Shown: in pieces, positions 11,250 to 44,646 of the stretch
Numbering within the stretch: the stretch's first letter is position 1
How the letters are laid out: each line of letters opens with the position of its first letter
From: Bugula neritina
Lineage: Eukaryota > Animalia > Bryozoa
NCBI GenBank assembly: GCA_964035545.1
Contig: OZ037766.1
Coordinates: forward strand, 29,824,640-29,888,639
DNA: 64,000 nt
Reading direction: 5' to 3'
Notes under the pieces: model-generated
Database searches by the model: none
The model's input: the letters and a program-made list of their open reading frames with translations, nothing else
Told to the model about the DNA's origin: nothing
Translations under genes and position numbers: made by a program

Positions 11250-11365
11250 ACTTGTATAGTACTGTTGCTAGTAGCTTGTAGTAATGTTGCTATAGTATAG
11301 CTTGTAGTACTGTTGCTAGTGGCTTGTATATAGTACTTTTGCTAGTAGCTTGTAGTAGTAGTAGC
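11250..11365. repeat. Short minisatellite (~22-27 bp unit, tagcttgtagtactgttgctag) in the inferred A1 5' UTR exon
   Basis: 4-5 imperfect tandem copies next to the minus-strand donor at 11237. Confidence 0.7.
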
Positions 11366-11436: not shown

Positions 11437-11574
11437 AAAATTCCCCCTCTCGTAATTCCCCATCTCGAAATTTCCCATTCAACTATGTTCAAGATAATAA
11501 TATTTTAATTGAGTATCATGCTAATATTCAGAAGTAAGGATAAATAGACATTGTTGTTTATATCGGGATTCCCC
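11437..11574 (-). promoter_or_regulatory. kappaB site cluster upstream of A1
   Basis: GGGGAATCCC on the minus strand (11574-11565), plus three weaker sites GGGAAATTTC, GGGGAATTAC and GGGGAATTTT at 11476-11437. Confidence 0.65.
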
Positions 11575-12488
11575 TTAATTGTACGATGTAACTCAGAGTG
11601 ACTGGAATTTTTCAATAATTATTCCCTTTAAATAAATAATATTTGAATAGACAAATAATCCAGCATGGAGTTTAAAATGCAGCAGTATACTTGCTAGGAG
11701 CCTGATATGGTGTATGTTTTACTCACTTACAATAATTATCAACAAGTTTTGCCAACATTCCTTGCCTAAATTATTTAAATAGAAACACTAGTATACAATA
11801 TAATAATCTTCTGCAACAATTAATACAATGACTTTCATGGATATATTCAAAGCTTTATCGCTTGCATTGTATCACTTTACTGCATCACTTGTAGCTCAGT
11901 CATCATTAACTATGACTTTCAGATTTATTTTTTTATTTAAATACTAGCCAACTTTAACTTTCTTCACAGTTTTTTTAAAGCTGAAAACATAAGATTGATC
12001 TTTTCACAGTTATATAATAAAAATTAATCCCATGCAGCTAGTATAGGGCCAAAAGTTTCTATGCAAATTAAACCTTGCTTCAAGCGCTCCAAGACGTAAT
12101 TTATTGTAAAGTTTTACTTCATCAACTTGTAAAAACTAGGCTCTGCAACATGGTTTGGCAGAATTATGTAGCAATTGAAATTATAGAGTTTATATACGAT
12201 GCTGGGTGCATGAACAATATTATTTTAATTCATTAATCATGGTTGCATCATCAGCTTTTTTTATTGACATGACCATGTTTTGTAAAAATTGTAAATAGTA
12301 TCTTAATTGTTTTTAAAAAAATTAAAAATGCAATGCAAGATTTTCCAACATATAGTTAGAGTAGATAGGAAAAAAATATTATTATGGAAAACACAAGCAC
12401 ACAAAACAAAAAGAAATATTACTGCTCTACGTAAACAGAATAACTGGTGTTTTCAAGACGCAGTTTTTCAGTGAATTTTTGAGTCCAA

Positions 12489-14731
12489 TTAGTAATCATC
12501 ATCCCAAAAACGGCGACGATTAAAAAAAAATTGATTTCTCAACATTTCCATTCTCTGTTGCCGAGCTAACTCTTCGCGATGCGCCATCATTCGCATGTAG
12601 AAAAGGGTTTGAAAATCAAGTCCTGACGACTCTTCATAGCTGGGTGGCTGGTATCGGGCAGGCTCGAGATCTTTGATTTGAAATGGGCGCTCTGGCTTTC
12701 CAGGAAACTTCACGCTTCCAATTCGACCTAGAAAATTGAACACAATTGTACTTTAGATACAATCAGCCTAAGCGTCAATTTTTCTAGATTTACTGAGCAG
12801 TTAATCAACCTCTTATTAATTCTCTAACTTAAGACATAGCGCTTTCCTATATACTAATAAAATGTCTTAAGACAGGAAGTGATGTATGATATACAGGAAG
12901 TAGTTTATGATACACATAAAGTAGTTTATCACTTTTCCATAAATAAGTGGCAGTTAGCCCAATGCAAATTATTGACTCATTTTTATGACAATGAGCCATA
13001 AATTGCGGCAATACACTGTGTTTTCATTTCTTTGCATTATATGCGAATAGATTTTTCATTCAATGTTTTGAAACAGGCACGTCATCGATGTTTTACAATA
13101 ATTACTAAAATTCATTTTATAGCATAGAAAGTAAACTTGCCCTTTTTTTCCAAAAACAACATGCTTTGTAAGACTTGTTAAAATTATATAAATTCAACAA
13201 TCACAATTATCATAAACATTTCACCTGAATCTCTAGAGCTCTCTACTTTCTCAACGAGCTCTCCGACATCTTCATGAGTTGCTCCTCCCCATCCAAGTTT
13301 GGGTGTTTCTACAGTCAGTTTCACCTGTCAGCATAATATACATGAATCTTTATATTCTCATTGAATTTTCGCGTAAAACCTATGAAAAATATATCGGGAA
13401 ACCAAATAATAATGATAATAACAATATCTAGTGTTAAATGTTACCTGCACTTTCTCCCCTTCAATAGGTTCTCTGGACATTTCTAGCTCAGTAGCTAACC
13501 CCACCCAGTCTTTGCATTCTGGGAAATCAACCGTGACCTCTTCTTGACCTTCGGCTCCTTCAATAGCTGTGATTTTTCCAACGCTACTTCCATTTACTCC
13601 GGCCCAGCCTCTGGATGGTTCGGGTATGTTACTGTTTACTCTTACTTCATCTCCAACCTGACAGGTGTAATATACTGTATAGTCTTATATAACTCACACT
13701 CACTCACTCAAGTTTATAGTCACCATCCCTGTGAGAAAACCCGTGATGGAAGGAGTTTTTGTTAAATTTTGCTAAAGACTCATTCAGATGGGGCACAGGA
13801 GCAATTATGACTGGATGCTCTTCCTAACATCATCAATGGTAGGGGTTCGAAGCCATGACTTTGTACTTACTAGGCAAACGATCTAACCTCTGGACCACGG
13901 CTGCTCTATACTATATACTCTTATATACTCGCATGTATACAATATTGCAGTATACACATACAGTACCCTGTTCAGTGTAATATATACTCCTACATTAATG
14001 TACATTATAGTAATATAATGCAGTTATATACATACACTACCAAATAAATCAAAGTCTATATACATAATTTCTTGTCTAGAACAATAGTTTACTATTAAAT
14101 ATTTGTTTGAGTATTGTATAAATGTATTATAATAATAAATTGCACCCATTTGAATAAATAAACTCTGATGTATCTAGTCTAGATTCAGTTTAGACTTGTA
14201 TGTTTCTTACCTCCAGTCCACAAGAAGGAGCAAGCTCTATCTCACTGTACAGACCTTTCCAGTCATGATTCTCAGGAAACTTCACAATCACAATCAAGTC
14301 ATTGGCAGGTTCTCCTGATTTTATCTCTTCCAAAGTGCCTTTACTAAATAGATTTATTTACTCACATTAAAAAACCAGGAACTCGTTTAAGCTTTAGTGT
14401 GATTTTCTTGCATATTATCATCAAATTAACAAAAACTCAAATTTTCTTAAAATTAAAGTTTCATTGTTTTGAATTAGGCTACAGAAAGTTCCTTGATATG
14501 TTTGAAGACAACATTTATAAAGTTGAAATAGAATATATTTTATACGTAAACCTGAATAAAAAAACTTGAACCCAATTAACAAATCAATTGCTGGATTTCC
14601 TTCATTATATAGAATTACATATAGCATACAATAATTGCAAATGCATATTGCAGACAAATTCAATTTTAGTGCATGCATCCAGTAAATAACAATAAATTTT
14701 CATTTGAATAGAATTTTTATATATTATATAT

Positions 14732-14778
<47 letters not shown>

Positions 14779-14800
14779 TTTATATATATATAATTATATA

Positions 14801-14852
<52 letters not shown>

Positions 14853-17800
14853 GTTTTAGCAGTTACTGGAATGTTTGTTATAATAGCTAAGGCAAAACTG
14901 TTGGAAATTTTATTCCAATCATCACATATAAAATCACTTATAATTGAACCAGGACTTTATATATCATTCTTATAACTATTGATATAATGCAAATATGAGA
15001 CTGATTTGTTTTTATAAAATTTTATTAACTGTTGACCGCTTTACCATCTTTTTTGTCTGATGCCATTCCATGAGAAGTGTGGTTTGGTAACGGAAGGTTT
15101 TATTTTAACTTTGTCTCCGATATAAGGAAGACTAACTTTCTTCTGACACTTGACTAAACTTCCTTCTGGTCCCTTCCAGTCAATCTGCTCAGGGAATACA
15201 GCCATTAGGACCTGTAGGGAGAATACACAGTAGACTAGCCTTAATTTCTTTTCTGTGAACAAAATTTTAAGTTTTAGAGTCATGTTGTATAATCAAAATT
15301 TCTTCTAAATCTGAGGAAGCTAGATCAAAAGTTCCAAGTTATAGACTAACATTGTACACCTAATAATAAAAATTTACTATAAATTTAAAAGTTACATGTT
15401 ACTCCATTAGCAACATTGAGAAAGAAAAGCTTCACATGAAAAATTGAAACATACTAAAGATATCAGCAGTTGGTTTTTAAAGTTAAGAATAAAATAGGTA
15501 TACGCAAATAAATTTACATTAAAAAAGTGGCAGCAATAGAACATTTAGTCTGCAGTACAGCTGCTATAATAAGCAACAAGTTCGTTTCTTTAAAATGATG
15601 ATAAGGATAAGCTATACCTTCAAGTGAGACATAATATATACAGACAAACTCTACAAATTTTTGCCATGTTGTTAACAAGTACAAGCACATGTATATAACT
15701 TACTCTTTTATAAAAAAACTCACTTGGGTCACTTTACTTAATTTAGTACACACTGGAAATTTCCAATTTCTATCTATTTTTCACAATTTAGCTGCTAATG
15801 AACATGAATTTTTGCTCAAAACTAGTAAAATATCATTAAATACACTTAGAAAATCAAGGTTCTTCTGAATTTTGCTTGATTTCCCATGTTTTTCTTATTT
15901 ATTTAGCTAGGTTGGATTGCTGACCGTTACTAAAAAACCATAACGATCCGCAATCAAAAGTAGCTGAATAATTAGGAAAAAACATGGGAAATCAAGCAAA
16001 ATTAAAAATAACCTTGATTTTTAGGTGTATTTATTGATATTTTATTAGTTTTGGGCAAAGACCCTTGTTCAAATTAGCAGCTAAATTGCAAAAAATAGAT
16101 AAAAACTGGAGATTTCCAGTGTGTACTAAATTAAGTAAAATGACCCACTTACTCTTTTATCTCCAGGGCAAATGCCCATGTTCAGAAATCTACCAACACT
16201 GGTGTGAGTCACTTTATTGTCCAGAATATTCTCAATGCGAATATCTGAACTGTCATCTATAGTTTCACTATAAGGCATAGCCTCTGTGTCATTCAGAGTT
16301 GCGAGACGTACGTACTCCCCTCCTCTGATACATTTACTGCAGCCTAAGTCTTAATTTGATACAATAATAAAATTGTAAATAGAATTGGTAAATTGAATAG
16401 GTTCTGCGGATATTTACACTTGAACAAAACAAATTCTAAGATTCTCAAGTATAGTTTCATAAAATTTTCAACAATAATTTTAAAATGTTGTGGGTTTGAG
16501 TGCAATATTTTGGTTCTAATAATTATGTAAATATAAAAAAAACCAACATAATGTTCCAAGTTAATGCAGCTATTTAACAATGCATTATGTTGCTATATAT
16601 AAGCATAATGTAACTTTATAATATATTGTTGTATAGTATAACATTGCCTGTAGCTAAAAGCTGATTTAACATTTAGAAAAGTTAATCAACTAAAGTACAT
16701 GCACGTAATAAATATATATATTTATACCATAAAATGGAGCTTTACAAAACAGATTTATCAAAGTCTATTGCTTACCTTGTAACTCTTCAAATTCTTTATT
16801 CAATGTTTTCAGCTGTTCAAAACTGGCTTTCTGCTTTCGTACTTTTTCAAGGAAATCACTTGAAGGTTTTCGTACGTATCGTGGTTGACGTAGCCGATAC
16901 TTGGGCACGGCTTCTAGAGCATTCTTCATTCTAGTTGCAAAAGGCTCCATCACTTTCAGAGTGGCTTTGTTGTACTCTGTTCTTTCTGCTAGAGCTGCAT
17001 CTAACCCTTTCAACTAAAGACACACCCTAATTGGTACACCAGAGCAATAGGTGGCGAGTGTTTGTTAAAACTGGCATTTTGCCAGCTTTTTCTACCTCTG
17101 GAGCTATGCATAAAATAGCATATTTATTCACAGGACTCTTTGTAAAAACAAATGCTGTAAAGCAAATCTTTCTTATAACACAACAAAATCTAAGTAAAAC
17201 ACGCTATATTTTACCTGTCAGCTGGTTTTAACTGCATGTCGGTTTTTTTTACAAAAATTCCCAATGTAGGCAGCCTTTAAGGTTGAGTTCAACTAATGAA
17301 AAAGCTATTTAACTCTAGATCTTGTAGCTATAGCTGATACATTTTGCTCTATAATTACTTAACATAGGCAGTTCAAACAAACCTTCACTTCAAATGATGG
17401 CTTCTTCAAAGTCTTTTGGTGGTCCTGGTACACTTTTTTAGTACTCTTTGCTTGGTTAGGCATGTCTTCCAAAATCAATCTGTACTTCATCATCTATAAT
17501 TAATATATAAATCTGACTATAATAATAATAAACATAATTTTTGGAAACAATATTTGAAAGAAATACAGAGTTATCCAACCAGTGAAATCCTTCACCTTGA
17601 TGTACGTAACAGCACAAGTTACATAATAATGGTAACATCACTTGTTAAGCTCATTGCTGCAACTAACGGCTTATAATGAGTATTATAGCACCTGTAGTTA
17701 AAATATTATGCTTATTATCGAGTTTTTTAATTTCAAACTATCATTACAAACTCATGCTGTACAGAGATGGATAGTATGAACACGAATGAGCAACATACAA

Positions 17801-20690
17801 AAAAATAATTTTTTAAAATATATATAAATAGGAACTTCCATAAAACATCTTTATACATTAACTTAAGTTAAGGTATAAAGATGTTTTATGGAAGTTCCTA
17901 TTTATATTATTTATCATGTATATGATCTGTATTTCAATTTAGTGACACATATATATGTATGATCGTCATTTTGTTTTTACTATAGCTTTTCAATGATTCA
18001 TACTAGGTCAAGCTTTTTTAAACTAAATGTTTTTATAATATATCAAATTCTTTCTCGAAAAGGGCAGCAAAAATTCAAAAAACCAAATTTAATCAAAGGT
18101 TTTGTTGCTAATGAGAAATTATTAACATTACCAGCTAGATTAAACAATTGTAATAATTGCTGCATTGAAAATCATTGAATTAACTAATTTTCTCAAAATA
18201 TATTAGAAGAAATATAATTCTACAAAGAAGTCGTGTTGCTAGCTGTTCTAAAGCTAAAGGATATAACATACTGTCTGAAACGCCTCCATAAACCAAACGT
18301 CTGCTGACTTCAACTCATCTTTTATCTCTTTAGCCAACTTCTTAACTGCCTTTGCATCAACTCCTACAGTATTATAAAAGTACTAAGCATTTTTCTTTTT
18401 AGTTCTTATATATTACAATAATATATATATAATAGCTAGCAGATATATCACAAGAAATTAGAGCTCTGAAAACACTTACGGACTGGTTGTTCTACAGGCT
18501 TTGGTTTTGTCTCATCTTTCTTTAGCTCAGCTTCCTTACTTTTAGTTGTTTCTCCATCAGACTTGGTCGAGCTACTTCTCGGTGGAACAACTCCAAACCC
18601 GCCATTAGAAAGCAGCTCTTTGGCTGATGGAGGAGAAGCAGAAGGTTTTTTCTCGGCTTCGGATTTGATGCTCAGATCAGGAGATTTCTCAGCTGCTTAC
18701 AAGTATATAATAATTTATAACAATTATGTCAGCTTTAATAGGGATGTTTATAGTTTACTTTACCTATAAAGTTCAACTATAGTTTAGTTATTTAATGCAT
18801 TTATACAAAAATTGTATCCTTGAACAGGTTTACAGATTTCATACAGACAAACCACTGGTCCATATATTGTGAATGAATATATTGCAATTAATTGAGAACT
18901 AGCTAACTCTAACACCAACTGCTACAAAAAGCTACTGCTCAGAAGTTATTTGCTCCTGTATATTTGTGTTCATAGACATACAATATTATTATAAAGTTCT
19001 ATGTTTTACTTGTGAAAAAATGTCAAAACACTAACTGACAGTGAATTCTTGGCAGCGTTCAGTTAGCTGATGTGTGCTGCCTCCGGTATACTTGATATCA
19101 TCGAGTTGAACTTTGACATCTACTTTATTTATACACAAAACAGTCACCTGTTTTACTTGGCTGGTTAGAGTCTGTTCCCTGTACTTTATCTTCAGTTTCC
19201 TTACCTCCAGCATCAGAGAGCTTCTTGCTCTTTATCAGATCTTTGAGTTGCTTTCCCACCAGACTGTCTGGCAGTTTTCCAACTCCTCCATTGGGCATTG
19301 GGTGTTGCTGTTTTATAAAGATTATATTATAATATAATAAGGGGAAAATATGAAATGATATAGTACAGTATAATATTTTATGAAACGTATATCAGTATTA
19401 TAATTTTTATTAAATGTAGTAATAAACAGTTATGCAAAAGTAATCATCATTTGCAATTGCTTTTATTTCCAATACTATTAAAGTGTTGATTATAATGAAA
19501 TATTATAGCTTTTTAGTGTTGTTATATAGTTATATACATATTGCAACATAATTCTGCCCAGCTGCATGTCATTTCATAATAAGTAGTATATTATTTCAGT
19601 ATCATAGTGCTAACCCACTGTTGACTTTGGCAATGAACTTGAACACACAATATGGTTATATTATTCACATTAGGTTATATATAATTAGCTAGTAGTTACT
19701 ACTATAACTAGTATATTGCAAATGTACGCACAATATTTTAAGTGCTAGATACATCACAATGATACTATAAACTATACTAACCTTACTGCATGACAAAGAA
19801 AAGATATTGTTTATATAGGAATACTCATGTTTATCTCTATTTTCTATAAAAGTAACCTGATAAATATTGTATTTTAGTTTAGGAACAGGAGCTGACCAAA
19901 GTCTAAGCTATGTTATGGATTTCAGTCATGACAGGGTTATTGGCAATGTCAGGAAAAGCACCTGGCCATAATTGCAGTTATGGTGCTTTGAAAGTCGTTT
20001 GACTATGTTAGAGTAATGCAAAGAGGTTCTTAGCTGTTTTACCACAGGAATGGAGAGTTTAAGCTATTGTGAAATTTAACAGATGACATGTGCTACCTGT
20101 TCTATGCCAATGTTTATATAGCTCTTCAACTTTGATGTGTATACATTTTATGCACGATTTACGTGATTAATAAAAACTATGACCTTCAACTGAGGGAATT
20201 ATCACACTATGAACTTTATTCACTATAATATTATACACAAATATTTGCTGTCCGTCACACTTTAATAATCTAGGCTATTATTGGAAAGTTTGAGGTATGT
20301 TTTCTTTTTTATTCGAAACAAAGAGTTTTCCCAACTTTGATAAACATTAGGAGTTATCCCCTCTACATTAACTTGAATCTGGCACTCAATGAGCTATGTA
20401 TATAAATTTACTAAGAAGCAAGTAGTGTGAGAAGAATACGATTAAAAGCACTAGCTATTATACTTCACATAATATACTACACATAAAATAGCAACACACT
20501 TATACTGACTAACCTTTTTGCAAACACTGCAAGTAAACTTTCTCTTAACAACATTCAGTTGTTTGGCACAAGGTAAACAGACAGTGTGTTGGCATGGCAA
20601 CACCTTCAACTCATCTACTTCCTGTTTACATATGTTACAGTTGAGTAGACTTCGAAGTGACTCTTCTATTGCATCCTGGTTAGAAGCCAT
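12489..20690 (-). CDS. RING - coiled-coil - 4x HERC2/KEG-like repeat protein, paralog B1 (~677 aa)
   Basis: 12 exons: 20690-20514, 19307-19157, 18695-18480, 18363-18272, 17493-17383, 17013-16776, 16349-16153, 15211-15045, 14343-14211, 13657-13445, 13324-13225, 12727-12489. Intron phases match A1. RING is CNIC..PCQHTVCLPC..CSVC. Example repeat: IGDKVKIKPSVTKPHFSWNGI..KGTL..VIVKFPENHDWKGLYSEIEL. Confidence 0.88.
13691..13906 (-). mobile_element. tRNA-derived SINE with ~20-bp target-site duplication in B1 intron 9
   Basis: A-box-like TGGTCCAGAGG, B-box-like GGCTTCGAACC, internal AGGAAGAGCATCCAG and a (GAGT)n tail. Flanking direct repeats at 13671-13690 and 13907-13926 have 2 mismatches. The element is absent from the paralogous B2 intron. 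Confidence 0.8.
14717..14850. repeat. (TA)n microsatellite
   Basis: Long interrupted TA run. Confidence 0.95.
15726..16146. mobile_element. Fold-back MITE (~420 bp, arms ~205 bp)
   Basis: Termini GGGTCA...TGACCC. The arms are reverse complements along their length, e.g. TTTACTTAATTTAGTACACACTGGAAAT / ATTTCCAGTGTGTACTAAATTAAGTAAA. ACTT flanks both ends as a possible 4-bp TSD. Absent from B2. Confidence 0.85.
17822..17907. repeat. 86-bp spacerless palindrome (1 mismatch) in B1 intron 4
   Basis: ATATAAATAGGAACTTCCATAAAACATCTTTATAC-A-TTAACTT|AAGTTAA-G-GTATAAAGATGTTTTATGGAAGTTCCTATTTATAT. Confidence 0.95.
19940..19976 (+). mobile_element. Degenerate fragment of the same SINE family
   Basis: TGGCAATGTCAGGAAAAGCACCTGGCCATAATTGC resembles TGATGATGTTAGGAAGAGCATCCAGTCATAATTGC of the 13.7-kb SINE. 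Confidence 0.5.
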
Positions 20691-21863
20691 TGTCTTGCTG
20701 TTGTGTAGGTAAGAGGGGTTACGCTAGACTAAAATATATTTGAAATATGTAATATATGCATTTTAAATGAAAACATGTTTTTGCTGTTTGGTTATTACTG
20801 TAATTCACCAGTGTGTGTGTGTAAAACTATCACTATTGGGAAATAGATTGGGAATTGATTTTTCATTCATGTCTGGAAACTGCTGCATCCACAACGAAGT
20901 AATGGAAACGAAGTGTATATCATGAATAGAATAAAGAGCAACTGGTAGCTGGTATAACATTGTTATAAAAGTTTTCATGTGATATTTAGAGATACAACTC
21001 TGTTATCTGCCCTCAAAACTATAAACTCAACTTTGCACCAACTGGAGATAAACAAATATCTCAGACAGAATATAATGTTTCATCATAATATAATCAAAGT
21101 AGCTATTTATAACCACAGTTAGTGCAATATCCCAGTTGATGTGAGGTACATAATTATGCAATAATTTCGTCATAAGATAAAGCATTAAGGAGAAAAGCTT
21201 ACAGGTAATAAAACCTGCAGTCAACTAAGAGTATTACGACACACTTTACTGCAACAAGTGGTAATATTTATATAATTTACATTTTTCGTTTACATTTTAA
21301 TAAAATTATAAAACTAGCAGCCGAAGTTATAAATAGCCTCATTGCCCCCCCCCTCTTATTCTCTTCCTATTGCCATACAACAAAACTGTGAATGTAAAAT
21401 TTACCCTTAAGTTCACCAATTTTAATAACCATGCAATAGCTTGAAATAAGATTGAAAAAGCAATTCATTTTTGACCTGAATATAATTGTAACCTCAAATT
21501 ATAGTACTAGTAGCCCCATATAAAACATTAAAAATCAGTGCTTGGAGTTTAAGAGTAAACAGAAGTAATACTTTGAATATTAAACATACAATTTATATTT
21601 TTAACTTTTAACTTATTGTGTATGCAGCCACTTTGATTTACTCATTTTCCTATATAGCTTCACTACATTATTCTATTATATCTTCACATATAACAGTTAT
21701 AATTATATGACAATTGAATATGCATACCTATAGGTATCGATTTGATGATAAAACCATTCATGAGTTCAAGAAGTCAGTAATAAACAATGGGACGGCAAAT
21801 GATATTGACACAGACTGTGGGTAGTGAAACAACACAAGTAATGATTTATTCAATAGCCTAGAT

Positions 21864-21912
21864 GGGGAAGTCCCTATACACAAACAGTTCGCGTCTTGAG
21901 TTGGAATTTCCC
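21864..21912 (-). promoter_or_regulatory. Paired kappaB sites upstream of B1
   Basis: Minus strand GGGAAATTCC (21912-21903) followed by GGGACTTCCCC (21874-21864). A candidate 5' UTR donor lies at 21727. Confidence 0.7.
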
Positions 21913-22548
21913 AACCGCAATAAGTACCCCTCATTATTATTTACAGCCACATTGACTGCATTAGAAGAATATCGAAGCGCGAAGTTGGAGGTAACTGAGT
22001 ACAGTATTTGTGGGTGTAAAAACTTCAAACCCTAGACCTCAACCAATGCACTCAGTAACCACCAACTGGGTGCTGCTTTAAGAGATTTTACATAAACACC
22101 CACAGCAGCTCAGCTTATATATGAATTGAGTCAATGCAACCATGCAAATTGACCAATAACTCGGCACTAAAGCTAACATTTTTTGAAATACATGGTTTGA
22201 ATAGAAAATTTGCAGTTGTAACTTACATCAGCAAACTACACACATTATTTTAGCGTACCAAAAGATAAAGAAATATATATCACCCATAACTGCTTTTCAT
22301 TTGAGATTCTGTTTCCATTACAGAAAATATTAAACTAAAAATCCAATAGATGGTTCACAATAAAAGATACATCGTAGTGGCCAAGATTTCAATAAATATG
22401 AATTCCAATTTTTCACTATCTTTTTTGTATATCTTACTTTCATAGAGACCTACAAGTCTACGCAGATGAAGTCACAGCATTTACTATGTTTATCTGCAAT
22501 TCATTACATCAACCGACTTAATTGCATATATCACGAATAACCAGTTTA

Positions 22549-22612
22549 GTAACAACATTCAATTAGAAGCACAGAGTTAACAGTGTGTTGGCATGCTAAC
22601 ACCTTTTACAAC
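22549..22612 (-). pseudogene. Relic fragment of a B-type RING exon
   Basis: TAACAACATTCA...ACAGTGTGTTGGCATGCTAACACCTT aligns with B1 exon 1 (TAACAACATTCA...ACAGTGTGTTGGCATGGCAACACCTT) with indels. Confidence 0.65.
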
Positions 22613-23349
22613 TATTACACCAACATGTGAGGTGTAAATCATATGTGTAAAAGCTACCATACATAACTAATAGCAAGGTAGCCTAGAGTAGTTTTGCATA
22701 ACTCTACAATTGTTTACTTAAAGGTAAATAGTTTATGTAGAGGTTGGAAAATAGAATGGAAACTGTGAAGAATTCAAGACAAACTTCTGCATTTCTTATA
22801 GACCTAACCAGGTATATAAACCATACGATTAATATTATACTACTAGTATTATAACATAGTTCTAGCTGTTACTTGCAACCGATATCACTTTAGTTGTTAT
22901 CGCAGGCATTCCTTATGCAACCAATAATAATACTATTCATTGTGATATACTCATATTCTAAATTACATTATGTGCAAACAATATGTATTGATATTCAGTT
23001 TCACCAATATCATTATGATTACTAAATTAATTGTTAGTAATCATCAGTCAATACTGATATACAATATAGCATGTTTTCATTTTATGGCCACAATATGAAA
23101 CAGCTTTTTTTAAATAGAAAATATCAATCTCGAACTAACCTGTTAGTACACAGCATTGCAGGCAGCATGACCTCCGGCATTCAGTAGCACTAGCAATGCA
23201 TAGAGCAGTACTATACAGTTGCTGCTATTACGTGACTCACAGCAGTACCACTGAAGCAATTTCGATATCCCTTACAACCAATCAGGAACCAACATGTGTT
23301 TCTATAATCAGTATAATGTAACTTTACCTTTAATGGAATGTAGTCAAAA

Positions 23350-23359
23350 GGGGAATCCC
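23350..23359 (+). promoter_or_regulatory. kappaB site upstream of A2
   Basis: GGGGAATCCC, identical to the A1 site and in the same orientation relative to transcription. A candidate UTR donor lies at 23586. Confidence 0.7.
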
Positions 23360-24181
23360 TGGTCACTCTAGAAGTTATAAGAGCTGCTAGTAATAAACTA
23401 TTTTAACAATGCAAACTGCTTGCTACAGGAGCTGCATTCACGGCATCGCTCTTATTATTCGCTCTGTTTCTTATTAAGCAGCCAGAGTAGAGAAAAAGTG
23501 TTGTCAGTTCTAGTAAGCACCATTTGGTCAACTAAGGAATCATCATTCTAAACATTCTATAGTTTCTGAACTCCGAGATCAACTGGTGAGTAGTATAATC
23601 ATAATGATATTGTATAATTATAACAATAATACAGTTAGATTCACATAATTTCTTGTAACTAGTTTTCTTTTAAAAAAAAAGAAACCTAATGGTTTAATCA
23701 TCTGCACTGATTAATATCTTCAGGGCTAAGATTCGTTAATCACATTCTGAAATGATAACTGACACAATGATTCATTAACTTGAAGATTAATTTACCTAAA
23801 CTTTGGCATTCTCGCTAAAAACACTGTGATGGTGGACTTTGTAAACAATAACATTTCGGCAAAGTCTGGGTATGTGAGCAATAATTGTTAAGCCAGTGCA
23901 GTGCACTCTCACTCTGAGTATTTGCCTGACTCATTGTAACAGCCAGTAGATAAACATCTTTAGAAACCTGTTCATGCTGCATATATACAAGTTTTGTATA
24001 CAAAAAATATCTTGTATCAAAAGCCACTGCCATTTAAAGTAGTTGGTCATGGAAAATCTTTATTTCATAATGGCTGACATTGAATGCAACCGTATTTTCG
24101 TGGCAAGACTAAAATTTAAAGGTATATAAAACAACCTTGAAAGGTACAACTACGTTATTATATTTACCATAGGAATTCAAA

Positions 24182-27100
24182 ATGGCAGAGAATGTGCCGA
24201 TAGAGGACTCCCTGAAACATCTCCTCAAATGCAATGTCTGTCTGGAACAGGTTGACACCCTGAAAGCGCTGCCTTGTCAGCACACAATATGTCTGACTTG
24301 TGTGAAGCAGCTGACTGTGAGACGTCAGCGATTCAAGTGCACTATTTGCAAAAAAGTAAGCTTTACATTATTTCATTTGCAGAACTGTATTCATTTATTT
24401 TTTATTTTTAAGATTTCAGTTTATTTACCCACTGTAGTTTTGAGCAGTTTATTATAACCTCTCGATTTTGTTGAAAATTAAAGTTTTCGTCGTATTTAAG
24501 ATTTTAGTTGATAATTTCATAACTGTTTGTGTTGCTTATTTGTGATTTACAAGCTATATCACATATGATTGGGCAATAACAAACCAGTTTACTGATTTAC
24601 TTTAGGAAAATCCAGTACCTGAAGGCGGGTTTGAAACTCTCCCAGACAGTTTACTAACTAAACAGATCTCTGAATTAATCCAAAAGAAAAGTTCAGGAAG
24701 TTTTGAAGAATTGCAAACTCAATCAAGTCTGAAGAAAGAAGGTACTGGGAACATCTACAACTATATTGCTGTGGTGTGCTGTGACCTTTCACTTTATATA
24801 GTAACAATTATAACTGCTGAATAAACTGATAAATTAACTATGAAAAAAATTAATTTTAAGAAGACATTTTGTAGCAAACTTTGTAAACAAGCCATATATT
24901 GATAGATCTATGTTGTTGGAACAATCTATGAATTGATAAGAAACAATAATTTATCTTTTCATAATGCAATAATCATATAATTTATTGTCAATGCATATTT
25001 TGTACCTACCAAGAAATAATCAAAATTATTCCTTCAAGGGTATTATTAAATTATGCCCCCTGTGTGCTACAGCTCAAGATACTAAAAAAGCTATGCTGAG
25101 TATTTCACCACCAGATGGAGCTGCTGAGGAAGACAATGAAGAAAACGGTTTGCTTAAGGTTATGCTGGATGATGACGAAGACGTAAAAGGTATTTACTTG
25201 CAGAGATATATTATATGTAAAGTTTGCGGTGTGTACTGCGCTCTATGGACTATCATAATGTCTTAAATATAAATAACACTGTAATATTCCTTTGGTAGAC
25301 AATTATTTATTGTATATATAGTATATTATAAACGCCATGTTGTATATAATTTAATGTAAAATAATAATACAACATTTACATTGCATTAAAATATATAATT
25401 ATATTTAAATATATAAAAATCATTTCAACACAAAATATTATATTAGTTCTGCATGAAATTAAACTTGAGTTTAAAACAAATGTGCACAGCTTGAATTATA
25501 TATGACAAATATTTGTTTATATGTAAAGTTGAATACAAATTGTCACTCTTCCTTTTCTAACCAAATCTGTTGATAGATACATGATGATGTTTTATAATAA
25601 TTTAGGGATTGACTTTTGGAAACTGCAAGGCAACTTGGATAATGAAAAGCGCAAAGCAGAAAGGAGTTATGAAAATGCAAAAGAAATGGTTAGTATCACA
25701 CTAATAGGTGGTATAGCTCCAAGAGAAACAAATAGATTTACAGCTGTTGTTTCTTGTACAAATCTAAAACTTACCAATATGACTAAAACTATGCAACAGT
25801 GTTCAGTTAAAAATGTTTAATAGCATGCATTGCTTTAGCTATATATAAGTACTAAAACTCTTAAAGCATTTTGAGTTTTCATCAGTTTTTGAATTTTTTT
25901 TATTTATTCACATTCTTTTATTGAAAATATTGTTTTATTTTAAGGCTATGTGCTAACTGTTACTTGTTGTATATCATCAGGTAATTGGCTAATGAAAACT
26001 TTGAATATGATTGCTTTTATTGGTCATCTTTTTGCACAACCAAGTAATTAGGTTTTTATTACAAAAGTGATGAGTGAGCCTTTTACACATCTGCTGTAAC
26101 CTTTAGGTCTGATATGCTGGTTATTTGTGAAAGACCATTTACTTAACTTACTGTTTACATGATTATACACATCAAATTAAGCTGCAATATGAACAATTAG
26201 CTGCTAGGAGGCTGAGTTTATAGCAGCTTTTGATATTTCTTTAGCATGCTTTCATGCAGTTACATAAAACACTTTTGTTTTAATTGTGGAGAAAATTGCA
26301 AATATTTTTATAGTACTCAGAAATAATGCAACAAATCTGAATTTTAAATAGAGCTAAAACTAAATTTTTACCAGAGTAATGGTTAAATTTGATTTGAGCA
26401 GGTAAAGAAATGTACTGAAACTTTGGAGAAGTTACCTGCACAAACTGAGGCTACAAAAGAAGCTATTACTCAGTATAAGAAGAAAGAGACACTTCAGTTT
26501 CAACAGAAGGTCTGTTTGCCATTCTTTTTTTTATTAGTTACTTTTTATGTCAGCAGGATTTCCTGCTGCCGGTGCTCATGTGATTGCTTGTTTAATATTG
26601 CTACTAAAAACCTAGTAGTTTTTACTGTATGTATGAGTTTTTTTAGTTCATTAATAAACATTTACAATTTTATTATATAAAACATGGTGCGATTCTCTTT
26701 GGTTTTGGTCGATGATAAGCAAATCTAAATCATAACACATTTATAAACAGTTGCCACGTAACCTTTCCAGATTGATGCCGTTGATTCAGCAGTGCGAGAC
26801 ATTTCAGCTAATCTTCAGAAGAAAATGTCAACTTACCAGCCTTACCTTGAAAAGGTTCGAAATGCTATAGACGTAGCAACTCAATCAGAGAAACTGCTGT
26901 CAGCTAAGAAGTGTCCTACTCATAGTCTCTTTGCTGACGCTCAGAGGCATTTGGCTGACTTGAAGAGAGTAATGGCAGACGCTGCCAAGAACTGGAGTGG
27001 TGAGTCATAGTCAGCCATATATACTGGAGAACGCTAAACACTATGCCTTTAATATCTTCATTAGGTTTACTGATAGTCGTATAATAAAGGGTATCTTATA

Positions 27101-30100
27101 ACCTATATGTAGACCAAGTGTTGAGCAGCAGTGGTATTGTTGATTATAGTTTTGGCTTAGTGAACATAGGTTTAAATGTTTGAATTCTTGCAAGTTCATC
27201 GTTGATCTTAGGAAGGGCATTCAATCACAAAAATCCTTAGAGACAGCACCGAGTTGGTGGTCACTGAGTGCAATGGTTGAGGGGGTTTGGACAGATATTT
27301 GCATACAAATACTGTACGTTCTCAGTCATCCTCAACTTAGCGCTGCTTCTAGCAATTATTCTTTAATCACAATGGATCCTCTGCTGTTAAGTTTGCGCAA
27401 TATCCTTAGCCCACTAAAAGCTTTGACCATAGAAAGGTTCATTTCAGGTCAAAAAAGTCTTAAAGGCTAAGTTTAGAGAATATATACTCAATATGATTGC
27501 AGTATCATATCTTTGCACTACTTGCTTTTGATACCCTACAGAAAACATTATTACTTTTTTTCTTCAAACAATTTTTCAATTACAAACAGCTGGTAACTTT
27601 ACCCTATGCTTTTTTATTTAAAATTGCTTTAATTCTAGAAGTGGGAAATCATAATTTTATGCGAGGTGACAGCATTCGTCTGAGACTCAACAAAGAATGT
27701 CTCACTGGAAAATTTAAAAAAAAGTTAATAGCTAGTAATGTCAACTACTCAAGTATTGGTATTGTCTATGGGGTAGCAAAGCAACATTTTCGATTTGAAG
27801 GAATTGAAATGACTGAGGATCAAGTAAGTTTTGTATTACTGTTGTTTCAATTTCACTTCTTGCTACTATAATTAATTTGCCTTCCCTGATCTGTTTTATT
27901 GCTTTTATTGTAAGTATAAACATATTTTATATTCAATTATTGTTTGAATATTGTCATGTCACATTTTTAAGGCAATACTAATGTTTCCTGAAGAACCTGC
28001 GTTTCTTGCACCAATTGGCAGCATAACTAGTTCTGCCGAAAAAGCCAAAAATGTCCCCTTCATTGGAGACAAAGTTAGGCTGAAGACAAAAGAAGTACAC
28101 AGCTACTACAGGAAACCAGCTGAGGGCAGGTAAAAGCATTGATGTGTGACACAAACTCTGTTTGCTCACAGCAGTTTCTCAAAGTCATATATAAAGTTTT
28201 GTTCATTTTGTTTAGACTTGCTTTGCTGCCAGAAACAGATTTTCTTAACACAGAACCGAAGAGTTCTTACTTTTTCTTGAATCTTGCTGTCAATTATTTT
28301 CTTTTTAATACATATAATATGTTAATTTCTTGTTCTACAATGTTTAGTATATCTACTAATTAATTATAGTAATTTTTTACAGGCTATAGATAATGAAGAC
28401 AATGATTATGCAATAAACAAGACCCTGAATCATTAAATACTTATTTTGTTTAGAAAAACTGATCTATTTTGTGCAGCCATAAAATGTTTTACTTTTTTAG
28501 GTTTTCAGATTGAGCAGAAATAGAAATAACTCTATTATCTACATGTAGTAAAATATCATATTTTTTAGTTTGCTAAATGCTTGCAGATCCCGTAGTGAAA
28601 AATAGAAATGTTTCTAAAAATAATATCTTTATGGTTGCATGTTCTTTAGATTTAGAATTTGAAGTTATAAGTAATTAATATTTGGAAACATTATAAACAT
28701 AAAACTTGCAACCTATTGTTACACAAAAAGAACTCTGCAGAGAAATTAATTTCTTGCTAAATAAATCACATTGTTTAACTGTATTTGGAATATTTTTAGC
28801 CATGGCGTTCTCAAAAGCTTGAATTTTGACTTCAGAGATGACGATGAACCGATAGTAAATGTTGTCGTTGAGTTTGCAGACGTAAGAGATTGGCGGGGAA
28901 ATTACGAAGACATAGAACTGGTGCCAGGGTGTGGTTTTGAGGTAACAAAGTGAAATTTGAATAAACAATTGCAATATTATATAATATACCCAAATCAAAC
29001 CAATAATTAGCAGAGTTTAAACAAATCTTGGCTTTGTTCTTTAATAAATACTTCTCTATAATTCAGCATCCACTATATTATAATACATAATGATATCTGC
29101 CTTAGGTTGGTGATAAAGTGAGAGCATCCAGTCGAATTCCAGAACCTTCCACTGGTTGGAATGGAATTAATGGTAGCAGTGTTGGTGTAGTGAAACAAGT
29201 GAAAACATTTCAAGGCAAAAAGAAGGTCATTGTTGAGTTTCCAGAAAATAAAAATTGGAAAGGGTTGGTTGGAGATTTGGAGCTAGTTAGAGGGCTTGTT
29301 GAAAAGGATACGGTTCAGGTAAATCATTTTAAATTGCTTTACAATTAATATATTGTACATTGGTTAAGAAGCAATAAAAAAACTTTCTGCAGATTTTTGT
29401 CTGATTTCATCGATTCTGCGTACTAGTATATATATACTATGGCTATATAGCCATATACTTGCGGCAACCATGTTAATCAATTTAAGTCGTATATGTTGTC
29501 TTTTATTTAAAATCAAAGAAGTTATTTATGTATAAACAGTAAACTAAAAACTAAAAAATTGCAATTTATAAGAACAAATGGCAATTTCATTGTGAAACCA
29601 CCAGAAGAAAATCAACTGTTTTTTCATTATGGATTTTGAGTTCACTATATTATATACTATCGTAAGCTGCAGGGTTTACAATATGAGTCACTTATGACTC
29701 ATAGCCAGAAATATATATTAATTTACAGGTGAAGCTGTCAGTAGAGAAACCCCGTCTAGACTGGGGAGGGGTGACTCATAAGGATGTGGGAACGTTGGTG
29801 GATATCACCAATAGCTACGATGATTTAGGTAGGTGCGGTATTTGTGTGCACACAGGTTAAGGCAAAGCACATATGCACAAACACAATTCCATGTGCGAGG
29901 TAGCCTTGTGAATGTTGAGTCATGCATTTCACTGAGATTAGTCTTGAAGTCCAAATTTTCTAATTTCTAGCCTGTGCACCAGAGTGTTACTAGATTGACT
30001 CTTTAGTCAAATAAAATAGTATATACTAGAAAAGGTATATAAAGTATAGTTATAAAACAGTTGATTTTGCTAACAGATCTCATACACATCTAAAAGCAAA

Positions 30101-30589
30101 ATAGTTAATGTACTCAAAACACATAAAATTATAGAAAATAGATTATTTGAAAATGTATTATTAGATTATCTTTTAAAAATTAGAGAATATCTTATTTGGC
30201 AAAAGTAATTAAACATGGCCTTTTTAATCTTATTTTTCATTGTGTACTAATAAATAAACTGTGGGAAAAATTAAAACTGGAAAGTGATTTCTAACTTTAA
30301 TACTTTTGATAAATACTGTTATTTGTATATACTATTGTAATAGCTGTACAAATTATAATATGCTTTAAATATTCCACATTGTGTTTCACTAAATGAATTA
30401 TACTGTATAGGTAAGATAGCAGAAGTACAGTTTCCCGACAGACCAAAGTGGTCGTGTCTGCTGGAAGAGCTAGAGCTGGCCAGATATCAGCCACCACAAA
30501 TTCAGATAAAGAAAGAACGGAGAGAGGTTACCATAGAGGAGATATTTTTTGCATCCATGCTTGAGCAGATGCGTGGCAATGGTTGGTAA
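24182..30589 (+). CDS. RING - coiled-coil - 4x HERC2/KEG-like repeat protein, paralog A2 (~607 aa)
   Basis: 12 exons: 24182-24355, 24606-24741, 25073-25189, 25606-25688, 26402-26509, 26771-26999, 27639-27823, 27972-28129, 28800-28941, 29106-29318, 29729-29828, 30411-30589. The frame is open and the gene is an exon-by-exon paralog of A1. Confidence 0.88.
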
Positions 30590-32481
30590 CCATATTAACG
30601 TGTTACTCTAACAGTTGGTAACCATAGTAACACTGGATACTTATGGCAATGCTGTATAGTTTTGCTTGAAGTAGCTGCAATGGCTCTCTCAGATATTTTT
30701 ATCAACTGCATATACCAGTACAATATGTGATAGTTATAGAGAGAGTTTTTTTTATTTTATTCTTTTGCTGCTACATAAATCCAATATTTTTTATATAAAA
30801 CATTATAATTACGTACAGACTTTGGGGATAAAGCAGCACAATTTATGTTTTTGTGGTTAAATACATACATAAAAATTTTATATATAGCTAAATCAAAATT
30901 ACCTAAGAAAAATAAAGACAAAATGCACATCTTTTGTTTTTGTAGTTAAAATATTTATGTTTCAATAACAAAATGTGTATAACAATTAGTAAAATATTTA
31001 GCTATAAAATTATTTGTACCCTTACATTATTTATGCTTAAACAGATAAAACTAGTTCATTGATTGAAAGATTATAAATATAAATGCAAAGATGTGGGGTA
31101 TTACAATGTTGAATGGTGTAACTGTTGTGTTTTAATATATATGTATATTTCTGAAGACCAATGAAAATTTGTCTGAATGAAAAAAAGTACTAAGGTTATA
31201 ATAGTCTAAAAATAGCTTTTTGCGGTAGCCAAAATAGCTGAACGCAAGCAAATAACACAACTAAAACATGTAGGATAGCTAAAATAGCTATAACAATACA
31301 ATTAAAACTATAATGATATAAGGAGAGTTTTCCATGTTCTATAACTAGTAATCTCCCAACAGATAGCATAATATATACTTATATTAGTTATTACACACAA
31401 TATAGTATAGTTACAATTGTTGAGTAGTAGAATGAGAATGCTTTTAGTTCGCAATGCATACTAACTATATTCAAGTGAAAGCTGCATCTCTCAAACTTTA
31501 CTTGGTATTAAACTAACAGATTACAACAGATCATAAAGATGTCATAGATGCGCAATGGCAAGCTTATCAATTTATATGATAAGATTACGTTTATCATAAC
31601 TTGCATAGAAGAATTGCAAATTTAAAAAGTAATCAAAGATTGCACTACATGGTTTTGTTTTGCAAAAATTTCCTAAATACATAACAAATATTTGTAAATG
31701 TCATTATACTTGTGTTCAGTTGTGATTTGATTAATTTTTTTATGGTCATGACTTGGTTATTGTTGAAATGAGATTTTTGTTGAATACAACACATGCAACT
31801 TTTAATTTAAAGTTAAATACAGGAAAATGAAATTAAACTAGAAATGAGCAACAGGACATGGATCACTCAGGTTATAGTATCTAATGTCCATGTTAAACCA
31901 TATAAATTATCAACATCATTGGCAGTGCATATAATTTAATAAATTTTTTTCTACATATCTCGGTTATCAAGTCAAATTATCATCACAATTGAATTTTTCA
32001 TCCCTTATCATCATAACTCTTGTAATGGTGATAAGACATTATTGAATAGAAAACTATATCCTCATCTGATAGTGTTTAGTATATTGCTTATCTATCCCTT
32101 CTAAAACTTTTATGGCCGGAAAATTTGTGTTGGGGATTTCTGGAAACAAATCTATAGTTATTTATTTTTATTTAACTGTTAATTCAGAGTTTTACAGCAA
32201 CAAATTTTCTATCTATGGGGAATTTTTAAGTCTATGAGAGTTGATGACTCATTCTTACAGGTTAATTGCACGTTATTTGCATTTTTGTACTCGGATCAAT
32301 AAGCATAGCTGCAATTCTATAGCAGATACTTGAAGCATTAGAAGTTGTTTATCAAACCAGCTAAACAAAAACTTACATACATCATGCATAAGACCTGTGC
32401 ACAAAAAATCAAAGTCCATAACGAAGGCGAATGCGATGCACATTGTTTTCTTTGAACTAGGTAATTCAATACAACACAAAA

Positions 32482-32523
32482 GGGGAATTCCATTTTTATG
32501 GTAATATAAAAAGGGACTTCCCC
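32482..32523 (+). promoter_or_regulatory. Paired kappaB sites upstream of B2
   Basis: GGGGAATTCC (32482-32491) followed by GGGACTTCCCC (32513-32523), the same order as in B1. A candidate UTR donor lies at 32646. Confidence 0.7.
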
Positions 32524-44012: not shown

Positions 44013-44646
44013 ATTTTATACCAAGTTTGGCATTGCCATAACACAGCTATATAATAACTTGTTGCACAACTTGAAGCTTGCATTAAAATGCCATAATTTT
44101 TTTTTACTTGCTTTTATAATATATCCTGGAGTAGTGTGAATTGAACCAACACATGGCTAATACAACATCCTGGCTAATGATATAATGCATGTTAACAAAG
44201 TCCAAAAGGTATATCACACTTAAATTCTGCCATGAAAAACATGGATTATTAAAAGACTATTTCGATAAAAAATTTCTATGTTACTCGTACTATATAAAAT
44301 TTATGACAAAGAATAGAATGATCTTTTTTAAATTTCAATTATTATAATATTAAGTAACTCATCAAAAAATTTAATTCATTTAGTTTTCACTGCATTGCAC
44401 TCGCAAAGTACTTAGTGGGGTAATAATAAGCAAAAATTTAATTTCTGCAAATGATGAGACAACTCTAACAAACTGGACATCTGCATGACCATCGAAGTTG
44501 TCTACCCTACGTTGTAGAGCTGTAAAGCAAACATAAATGTATTATTGTAATGTTTAGTTTAAATACTTTTCCATAGATGGACAAACATGAAGGGCATAGA
44601 CATTTTCACCGATAGCTCTTAATTTACCTTAGCCATAAAGAAGAGA

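What the first reader, a model, noticed from the sequence alone, without database searches (positions are those of the whole stretch)
11437..32523. Paralog-conserved NF-kappaB sites upstream of all four E3 genes
Seen: A1 (11574-11565, -) and A2 (23350-23359, +) both carry GGGGAATCCC about 820-880 bp before the ATG in the same orientation. B1 (21912-21864, -) and B2 (32482-32523, +) both carry GGG(A/G)AATTCC followed 21-28 nt later by GGGACTTCCCC, although the flanks are not alignable by eye. Each set lies about 120-330 bp upstream of a candidate non-coding first-exon donor (11237, 21727, 23586, 32646). Established: all six sites fit the Rel/NF-kappaB consensus GGGRNWYYCC. A rough estimate at ~30% GC gives about one chance match in the whole window; I did not scan exhaustively. 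Inference: this is a phylogenetic footprint showing the family is immune-inducible, with subfamily-specific kappaB grammar.
Basis: partly seen in the sequence, partly recalled or inferred. Interest (0 to 1): 0.82.

Follow-up and report, generated by a model that had tools for sequence, protein, structure and literature searches.

The report
Conserved NF-kB sites before bryozoan E3 genes
Four neighbouring RING-type ubiquitin-ligase genes of a moss animal (bryozoan) keep perfect NF-kB-type binding words just upstream, and so do their relatives in this and other assemblies. This makes them good predicted NF-kB targets, but no binding or induction has been shown.

Summary
The six sites are the only exact GGGRNWYYCC matches in the 64-kb window (8 strand hits; shuffles give 0.77; the genome-wide density gives 2.6). 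All lie 5' of the ATG/RING exons of four paralogous genes, A1, B1, A2 and B2.

The paralog pairs align only in exons. In a motif-blind test, the rarest word shared by their 1.3-kb flanks is the kB word in both pairs (7/1000 shuffles each).

The same words recur upstream of homologues elsewhere:
- three of four distant paralogs in this genome;
- an ENA contig that carries both GGGACTTCCCC and GGGGAATCCC;
- two genes of assembly GCA_963576615.1.

Overall, 13 of 15 sites in 160 kb of family loci lie within 3.5 kb 5' of the RING exon (P about 2e-7). The reversed-word control shows no such bias. The genome encodes Rel-homology proteins with the RFRY..EG DNA-contact loop.

TATA-like boxes sit beside the sites. 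A young LTR retrotransposon in the same genome has the same kB-TATA layout.

"Subfamily-specific grammar" is weakened, because one homologue carries both word types.

First readers of the scan also noted kB motifs elsewhere in this genome; those notes are unchecked.

Verdict: a real, conserved, predicted Rel/NF-kB element set, and a new member of a known kind.

The parts
11565..11574 (-). A1 kB site GGGGAATCCC; it also fits the consensus on the other strand
   Evidence: exact match. (12-mer AAGGGGAATCCC shared with A2).
11557..11562 (-). A1 TATAAA, 2 nt 3' of the kB site; candidate TATA box
   Evidence: read from the sequence. Function is inferred.
11437..11476 (-). A1 triple 15-bp tandem of kB-like half sites: GGGAAATTTC, GGGGAATTAC (1 mismatch each) and GGGGAATTTT (2 mismatches)
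11255..11363 (.). Minisatellite inside the putative A1 first exon; similar arrays occur elsewhere in the genome
   Evidence: matches to query positions 570-678.
10518..10685 (-). A1 ATG/RING exon. The gene's coding exons run down to about 3301.
21903..21912 (-). B1 first kB site GGGAAATTCC
21864..21874 (-). B1 second kB site GGGACTTCCCC, directly preceded by GTGTATA
21964..22098 (.). Dispersed SINE-like repeat just upstream of the B1 sites, not covering them; another copy lies at about 27230-27344
   Evidence: about 40 genomic matches to query positions 565-699.
20535..20690 (-). B1 ATG/RING exon. The gene's coding exons run down to about 12492.
23350..23359 (+). A2 kB site GGGGAATCCC
23376..23381 (+). 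A2 TATAAG, 16 nt 3' of the kB site; candidate TATA box
   Evidence: Function is inferred.
23488..23587 (+). End of the candidate A2 non-coding exon 1, with donor CTG|GTGAGT at 23586. About 90% identical in the orthologous contig L011.
24182..24349 (+). A2 ATG/RING exon. The gene's coding exons run to about 30586.
32482..32491 (+). B2 first kB site GGGGAATTCC
32505..32512 (+). B2 TATAAAAA between the two kB sites; candidate TATA box
   Evidence: Function is inferred.
32513..32523 (+). B2 second kB site GGGACTTCCCC
33098..33253 (+). B2 ATG/RING exon. The gene's coding exons run to about 40081.

Best explanation
The six sites are conserved cis-regulatory elements of the Rel/NF-kB (kB) type. They lie in the promoter regions of four tandem paralogs of a lineage-restricted gene family: an N-terminal RING, then coiled coil, then Mind-bomb-like SH3 repeats.

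Proposed mechanism (inferred). A Rel-homology protein of this bryozoan binds the 10-11-bp words once it is activated. The gene on C9 is the best candidate, because its recognition loop reads FRFRYECEGR. The words sit within a few to about 30 nt of TATA-like boxes. Binding would switch on transcription from a start about 25-30 nt past the TATA. The transcript would begin with a short non-coding exon spliced to the ATG/RING exon.

Shown here: the sites, their statistical excess, their retention in otherwise unalignable flanks, their recurrence upstream of family members in this and other assemblies, and the presence of RHD genes.

Inferred: binding, the transcription start, inducibility, and any immune role.
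For: - The six sites are the only exact consensus matches in 64 kb; shuffles give 0.77.
- All lie 5' of the four RING/ATG exons.
- The paralog pairs align only in exons.
- In a motif-blind test, the rarest word shared by the 1.3-kb flanks is AAGGGGAATCCC for A1/A2 and AGGGACTTCCCC for B1/B2. Each is reached by 7 of 1000 shuffles.
- Three of four distant paralogs have a site 363 to 2147 bp upstream.
- The homologue on ENA contig L028 has GGGACTTCCCC at -1714, and GGGGATTCCG plus GGGATTCCCC at about -1242.
- Two genes of GCA_963576615.1 have GGGGAATCCCC at about -3.3 kb and GGGGAAATTCCC at about -0.4 kb.
- Pooled, 13 of 15 sites in 160 kb lie within 3.5 kb 5' of the RING exon, which is 22% of the DNA (binomial P 1.7e-7). 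The reversed-word control gives 2 of 5. Ten of 11 genes carry a site.
- The words are over-represented genome-wide against their reversed forms: 8869 vs 5260, GGGGAATCCC 351 vs 40, and the 12-mers 37 vs 2 and 20 vs 3.
- RHD genes are present, with three consecutive PF00554 exons on C9 and a second locus on C1, and both carry RFRY..EG loops.
- The flanks holding the sites are single-copy.
- TATA-like boxes adjoin the sites. A young LTR retrotransposon in the same genome has GGGAATTCCCC-CC-TATATAAG in its LTR, sense to its ORFs.
- Literature: NF-kB site specificity is highly similar from protists to cnidarians. In Exaiptasia, heat-stress genes enriched for predicted NF-kB sites include several E3 ligases (PMC13042239).
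Against:
- The paralogs are not independent samples, and the 3.5-kb upstream window was fixed after the data had been seen.
- Distances to the ATG vary from 0.36 to 3.3 kb, so a promoter-proximal position is not established.
- For A2, a TATATAAAA 50 bp before the ATG lies in a stretch that is well conserved in L011. This could be the real promoter, which would make the kB site a distal element.
- One distant paralog has no site in 3.5 kb.
- A candidate positive control failed: an ankyrin, IkB-like gene region of 20 kb has no exact site.
- Much of the genome-wide excess of kB words comes from satellites and LTRs.
- The orthologous contig L011 stops 130 bp short of the A2 site, so the closest cross-species test could not be made.
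Confidence: 0.6

Rival explanations
1. The words are real, conserved regulatory elements, but another factor with overlapping specificity binds them. Candidates are an NFAT-like RHD protein, Su(H)/RBP-J (TGGGAA), ETS (GGAA/TTCC cores), STAT (TTCNNNGAA-like) or EBF/COE.
For: The conservation and enrichment evidence concerns the words, not the protein that reads them. B1 reads TTGGGAAATTCC, and GGGACTTCCCC contains a GGAAGT core on the other strand. The second RHD locus has a variant loop, YRFRYEVEGK.
Against: All six sites fit the full 10-bp kB consensus, including both GGG and CC flanks. The shorter motifs of the other factors do not require these. The specific words are also strongly over-represented against their reversed forms. 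From my own knowledge, GGGAAATTCC, GGGGATTCCCC and the near-match GGGACTTTCC are classical high-affinity kB sites.
Confidence: 0.15
2. The sites have no function. They are chance matches or leftovers of the duplicated ancestral flank, possibly kept alike by gene conversion that spread from the highly similar RING exons.
For: The RING exons are 93% identical while other exons are 71-88% identical, which hints at gene conversion. Exact 12-mers of any kind are not rare between AT-rich flanks. Against the true genome density, the window excess is only about 3-fold.
Against: The blastn alignments stop at the ATG or about 30 bp before it, and nothing aligns in between, so conversion tracts do not reach the sites 0.6-1.2 kb away. 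Composition-weighted shuffles give P of about 0.007 for each pair. The same words recur upstream of non-alignable distant paralogs and of homologues in other assemblies, while the reversed control does not.
Confidence: 0.1
3. The kB-TATA modules were delivered by transposable elements, as solo LTRs or similar, and exapted as promoters. They would then be functional but not ancestral to the gene family.
For: LTR retrotransposons in this genome carry kB-TATA in their LTRs, many as pairs 6.2-7.5 kb apart. L020 and L021 have kB pairs beside a retroelement. A SINE-like repeat abuts the B1 promoter.
Against: The B2 flank has no other genomic match. The A1, A2 and B1 site neighbourhoods are also single-copy at E<=1e-3. 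The same words occur upstream of homologues in other assemblies, which argues for age.
Confidence: 0.08

Closest known systems
Promoter-proximal kB elements of vertebrate and insect Rel/NF-kB target genes. Examples from my own knowledge: IFN-beta PRDII GGGAAATTCC, MHC class I H2 site GGGGATTCCCC, Ig-kappa/HIV LTR GGGACTTTCC, and Drosophila antimicrobial-peptide genes.
   Same: Full match to GGGRNWYYCC. One to two sites per promoter, plus weaker neighbours. Closeness to TATA-like boxes. RHD proteins are encoded in the genome.
   Different: No binding, start-site or induction data here. The organism is a bryozoan, for which the literature search found no NF-kB target studies. The target genes are a lineage-restricted RING family.
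Predicted NF-kB regulons of cnidarians, as reviewed in PMC13042239. These include Exaiptasia heat-stress genes enriched for predicted NF-kB sites, among them several E3 ubiquitin ligases, and Nematostella TRAF3-like and BCL3 genes.
   Same: Computational kB-site enrichment upstream of ubiquitin-ligase genes in a marine invertebrate. The reading relies on the conserved RHD specificity shown by protein-binding microarrays.
   Different: The cnidarian predictions are tied to expression changes. Here the support is paralog and cross-assembly conservation only.
NF-kB-induced ubiquitin-system feedback regulators (A20/TNFAIP3, cIAP2/BIRC3, TRAF1 and some TRIMs; from my own knowledge)
   Same: RING or ubiquitin-editing genes with kB sites in their promoters. 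A second expanded family in this genome, the B-box TRIM-like genes on C8, also has twin GGGACTTCCC upstream.
   Different: There is no homology to those proteins beyond the RING. The substrates and pathway role of the bryozoan family are unknown.
Mind bomb (MIB1/2) E3 ligases
   Same: A weak match to the Mind-bomb SH3 repeat (PF18346, 19.4-19.7 bits) in one exon of each gene, plus a RING.
   Different: The RING is N-terminal rather than C-terminal. No MIB/HERC2, ZZ or ankyrin domains were detected, and the SH3_15 scores fall below Pfam's cut-off of 24 bits. These genes are not Mind bomb orthologues.

Membership tests
Rel/NF-kB response element (kB site) | Sequence fits the kB consensus GGGRNWYYCC | tested here: met
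   six exact sites; further 1-mismatch neighbours in A1.
Rel/NF-kB response element (kB site) | The organism encodes a Rel-homology-domain factor with the DNA-contact loop | tested here: met
   PF00554 is matched above its cut-off in three consecutive exons on C9 and at one locus on C1; the loops read FRFRYECEGR and YRFRYEVEGK.
Rel/NF-kB response element (kB site) | Retention beyond neutral expectation in paralogous or orthologous regulatory DNA | tested here: met
   (flanks do not align; the kB word is the rarest shared word, 7/1000). (13 of 15 sites upstream, P 1.7e-7, reversed control flat).
Rel/NF-kB response element (kB site) | Lies in the promoter or enhancer of the regulated gene, relative to a mapped start site | tested here: inconclusive
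   TATA-like boxes and GT donors are nearby, and the A2 donor is conserved in L011.
Rel/NF-kB response element (kB site) | Bound by Rel/NF-kB protein (EMSA, protein-binding microarray, ChIP) | not testable with these tools
   Needs a bench experiment.
Rel/NF-kB response element (kB site) | Confers signal-dependent induction (immune or stress) | not testable with these tools
RING-type E3 ubiquitin ligase | RING finger with the full set of zinc ligands | tested here: met
   zf-RING_UBOX scores 33.1 and 32.0 bits (cut-off 25.2), and zf-C3HC4 27.8 and 28.0 (cut-off 21); the Cys/His columns are invariant in all four genes.
RING-type E3 ubiquitin ligase | E2-dependent ubiquitin transfer | not testable with these tools
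   Needs a biochemical assay.
Mind bomb family | MIB/HERC2 and ZZ domains, REP repeats, ankyrin repeats, C-terminal RINGs | tested here: not met
   only an N-terminal RING and a sub-threshold SH3_15 match (at most 19.7 bits against a cut-off of 24). No other Mind bomb domains were found in the exons or in the full-length homologue P0009.

The most novel reading that the evidence does not exclude
This bryozoan has an NF-kB regulon built on a compact kB-TATA core-promoter module. The module is shared by lineage-specific expansions of ubiquitin-ligase-type genes (the RING/Mind-bomb-repeat family here and a B-box TRIM-like cluster on C8) and by young LTR retrotransposons. Either retroelements hijack the host's NF-kB signalling, or they have helped to spread NF-kB-responsive promoters to immune gene families in a lophophorate.
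Probability: 0.2. Interest if true: 0.65.

Novelty: new member of a known kind. Interest (0 to 1): 0.45.

Why it matters
My literature search found nothing on innate-immune gene regulation in bryozoans; it returned only pharmacology papers. A set of conserved, high-quality kB sites in front of a tandem RING-ligase family gives concrete, cheap-to-test target promoters for the bryozoan Rel/NF-kB protein. The genome-wide excess of the same words, in TRIM-like clusters and in LTRs, points to a wider regulon. If confirmed, it would extend the link between NF-kB and expanded E3-ligase families, already predicted in cnidarians, to the Lophotrochozoa. It would not be a new principle.

Tried and rejected
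- **Closest ortholog.** The RING-exon ORF of A2 found one JGI metagenome contig (L011, 78% identical to 23490-24559). It starts 130 bp downstream of the kB site, so no test was possible.
- **B-type RING ORF.** The word search found nothing.
- **Metagenome scans.** The RING profile gave 319 pattern matches but no relative. The composite B pattern gave four unrelated matches in contigs of 42-67% G+C.
- **P0009.** This full-length 766-aa homologue has no contig on record. L027 and L031 are too short upstream, and the contig for P0012 has no DNA held.
- **Other tandem kB pairs in the genome.** Many are satellites, an intronic mini-repeat in an actin-related gene (L018), or lie beside retroelements (L020/L021), so they do not serve as a simple promoter control.
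- **Upstream of the C9 RHD gene.** There is no exact site in 9.7 kb; the only one lies just after the RHD exon.
- **IkB-like ankyrin region suggested by note s1-472369.** There is no exact site in 20 kb.
- **ESM Atlas look-alikes of P0009.** All scores were at or below 0.83, which is uninformative.
- **Joined protein model.** Exons were searched one by one by reference.
Full report
**What is there**

The window comes from a bryozoan genome: 216 Mb, about 31% G+C, with the window at C2:29824640-29888639. The bryozoan identity rests on an earlier scan note, s1-475707, which I did not check.

Stop-to-stop reading frames and paralog alignments define four genes of about 7-9 kb:
- A1, minus strand, ATG 10685, last coding exon at about 3301;
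- B1, minus strand, ATG 20690, last exon at about 12492;
- A2, plus strand, ATG 24182, last exon ending at about 30586;
- B2, plus strand, ATG 33098, last exon ending at about 40081.

Each gene begins with a RING-finger exon that scores above Pfam's cut-offs. Each also has one exon with a sub-threshold match to the Mind-bomb SH3 repeat (PF18346, 19.4-19.7 bits against a cut-off of 24). A 766-aa full-length homologue from another source, P0009, maps collinearly onto all four genes. They are RING-type E3-like genes, not Mind bomb orthologues.

**The observation**

Exact GGGRNWYYCC occurs at six sites (8 strand hits). Dinucleotide shuffles give 0.77, with a maximum of 4. The stated orientations, spacings and distances are correct.

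The whole genome holds 8869 strand hits, or 2.6 per 64 kb. Against real DNA the raw excess is therefore about threefold, not tenfold. What is unusual is the placement, since every site lies 5' of one of the four ATG/RING exons.

**Is it a footprint?**

A1/A2 and B1/B2 align by blastn (word size 7) only in exons, plus a few short intron patches in B. The 5' flanks do not align, and the alignments start at the ATG or about 30 bp before it.

I then ran a test that knows nothing about kB. It takes the rarest word shared by the two 1.3-kb flanks under a first-order background and compares it with 1000 dinucleotide shuffles. The winner is AAGGGGAATCCC for A1/A2 and AGGGACTTCCCC for B1/B2, each reached by 7 of 1000 shuffles. 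A2 and B2 also share CAAAAGGGGAAT (41/1000), which hints that the A and B sites descend from one ancestral site.

The stretches holding the sites are single-copy in the genome. The nearby repeats do not cover the sites: a SINE-like element at 21964-22098 and a minisatellite at 11255-11363.

**Relatives elsewhere**

A profile of the four RING exons finds four more distant paralogs in the same genome. Three of them have an exact kB site 363, 2003 or 2147 bp upstream; one has none in 3.5 kb.

A profile search of 1.84 billion representative proteins returned homologues whose DNA could be fetched:
- ENA contig L028 has GGGACTTCCCC at -1714, and GGGGATTCCG plus GGGATTCCCC (the reverse of GGGGAATCCC) at about -1242. 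A GTGAGT donor lies about 380 bp further on.
- Two genes of the chromosome-scale assembly GCA_963576615.1 have GGGGAATCCCC at about -3.3 kb and GGGGAAATTCCC at about -0.4 kb.

Pooling all 160 kb of family loci, 13 of 15 sites lie within 3.5 kb 5' of the RING exon, which is 22% of the DNA (binomial P 1.7e-7). Ten of 11 genes have at least one site. The composition-matched reversed word shows no bias (2 of 5).

Two caveats apply. Paralogs are not independent, and I fixed the 3.5-kb limit after seeing the data.

**Can the words be read?**

The genome encodes Rel-homology domains. PF00554 is matched above its cut-off in three consecutive exons on C9, and once on C1. The recognition loops read FRFRYECEGR and YRFRYEVEGK.

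Protein-binding microarrays have shown very similar kB-site preferences for NF-kB from a protist, a sponge and sea anemones. In Exaiptasia, stress-induced genes enriched for predicted NF-kB sites include several E3 ligases (review PMC13042239).

The words themselves are over-represented genome-wide against their reversed forms:
- GGGGAATCCC, 351 vs 40;
- AAGGGGAATCCC, 37 vs 2;
- AGGGACTTCCCC, 20 vs 3.

Part of that excess comes from satellites and LTRs.

**Likely mechanism**

TATA-like boxes adjoin the sites:
- A1: GGGGAATCCC-GA-TATAAA.
- A2: the kB site, then 16 nt, then TATAAG.
- B2: the first kB site, 13 nt, TATAAAAA, then GGGACTTCCCC directly.
- B1: GTGTATA directly before GGGACTTCCCC.

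A young Ty3/gypsy-type element has 100%-identical LTRs and a protease-RT-RNaseH-integrase ORF. Its LTR carries GGGAATTCCCC-CC-TATATAAG, sense to its genes, and many such LTR pairs exist. This is an independent example that a kB-TATA module serves as a promoter layout in this genome.

I therefore propose that activated Rel/NF-kB binds next to the TATA box and drives a transcript that starts about 25-30 nt downstream. The transcript would begin with a non-coding exon of about 100-290 nt ending at the GT donors at 11237, 21727, 23586 and 32646. All four ATG exons are preceded by a pyrimidine-rich AG acceptor, and the A2 donor is conserved in the orthologous contig L011. All of this is inference.

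For A2, a TATATAAAA 50 bp before the ATG lies in an equally conserved stretch. It could be the true promoter, which would make the kB site a distal element.

**What is not supported**

Immune induction is untested.

"Subfamily-specific grammar" is weakened by L028, which carries both word types.

An ankyrin (IkB-like) gene region that another reader flagged has no exact site in 20 kb. A classical positive control therefore did not come through.

**Comparison and verdict**

This is a well-supported computational prediction of Rel/NF-kB-type elements in front of a lineage-restricted RING-ligase family. It resembles known kB-driven promoters and cnidarian predictions, so it is a new member of a known kind. 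First readers of the scan have noted kB motifs at other loci of this genome, but those notes are unchecked. One follow-up, on TRIM promoters, rejected the kB part there.

My confidence that the sites are functional RHD-bound elements is about 0.6. My confidence that the genes are immune-inducible is lower, at roughly 0.35-0.4.

Noticed in passing
L038 (G000:C1:3619600-3628100), LTR copies at 610-909 and 6964-7263; kB-TATA at 1009-1029: A young Ty3/gypsy-type LTR retrotransposon with 100%-identical LTRs and a protease-RT-RNaseH-integrase ORF. Each LTR carries GGGAATTCCCC-CC-TATATAAG, sense to the ORFs. One search lists more than 15 similar TATA-kB pairs 6.2-7.5 kb apart across the genome.
   Followed up: partly
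L032 (G000:C8:9371000-9380999) 7990/8065; L033 (C8:9413000-9422999) 8728/8804: Tandem B-box/coiled-coil (TRIM-like) genes each have twin GGGACTTCCC sites 75 bp apart, about 2.2 kb 5' of the first B-box exon (PF00643 at 24.8 bits). Six copies of AGGGACTTCCCC lie within 43 kb on C8.
   Followed up: partly
G000 genome-wide: kB words are strongly over-represented against their reversed forms: GGGRNWYYCC 8869 vs 5260, GGGGAATCCC 351 vs 40, AAGGGGAATCCC 37 vs 2, AGGGACTTCCCC 20 vs 3. Five copies of AAGGGGAATCCC cluster within 47 kb on C4:24.36-24.41 Mb, near PAN/apple-like and mucin-like ORFs.
   Followed up: partly
G000:C3:1595577-1595818; C8:182601-182820 and 394844-395063; C2:708122-708378: Satellite arrays with units of about 19-33 bp, each containing a kB-consensus word. 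They inflate genome-wide counts of tandem kB pairs.
   Followed up: no
window 21964-22098 and about 27230-27344: A dispersed SINE-like repeat of about 115-135 bp, with about 40 scored copies genome-wide at 71-92% identity. One copy lies just upstream of the B1 promoter and one in an A2 intron.
   Followed up: partly
window 1000-2031 (+): A long Gly-X-Y collagen-like open frame of 343 aa.
   Followed up: no
window 43023-44015 (-): An intron-less 331-aa open frame with hydrophobic segments and an ERY motif (SSIERYIAVCRPF). It looks like a rhodopsin-type GPCR.
   Followed up: no
L018 (G000:C1:1377000-1386999) 4971-5061: Three kB-consensus words within 90 bp form a mini tandem repeat inside an intron of an actin-related gene. 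It is not a promoter.
   Followed up: partly
   Followed up: partly
window 11255-11363: A minisatellite (units like CTACTAGCAACAGTACTA...) lies inside the putative A1 5' exon. Similar arrays occur on C3, C4 and C7.
   Followed up: partly
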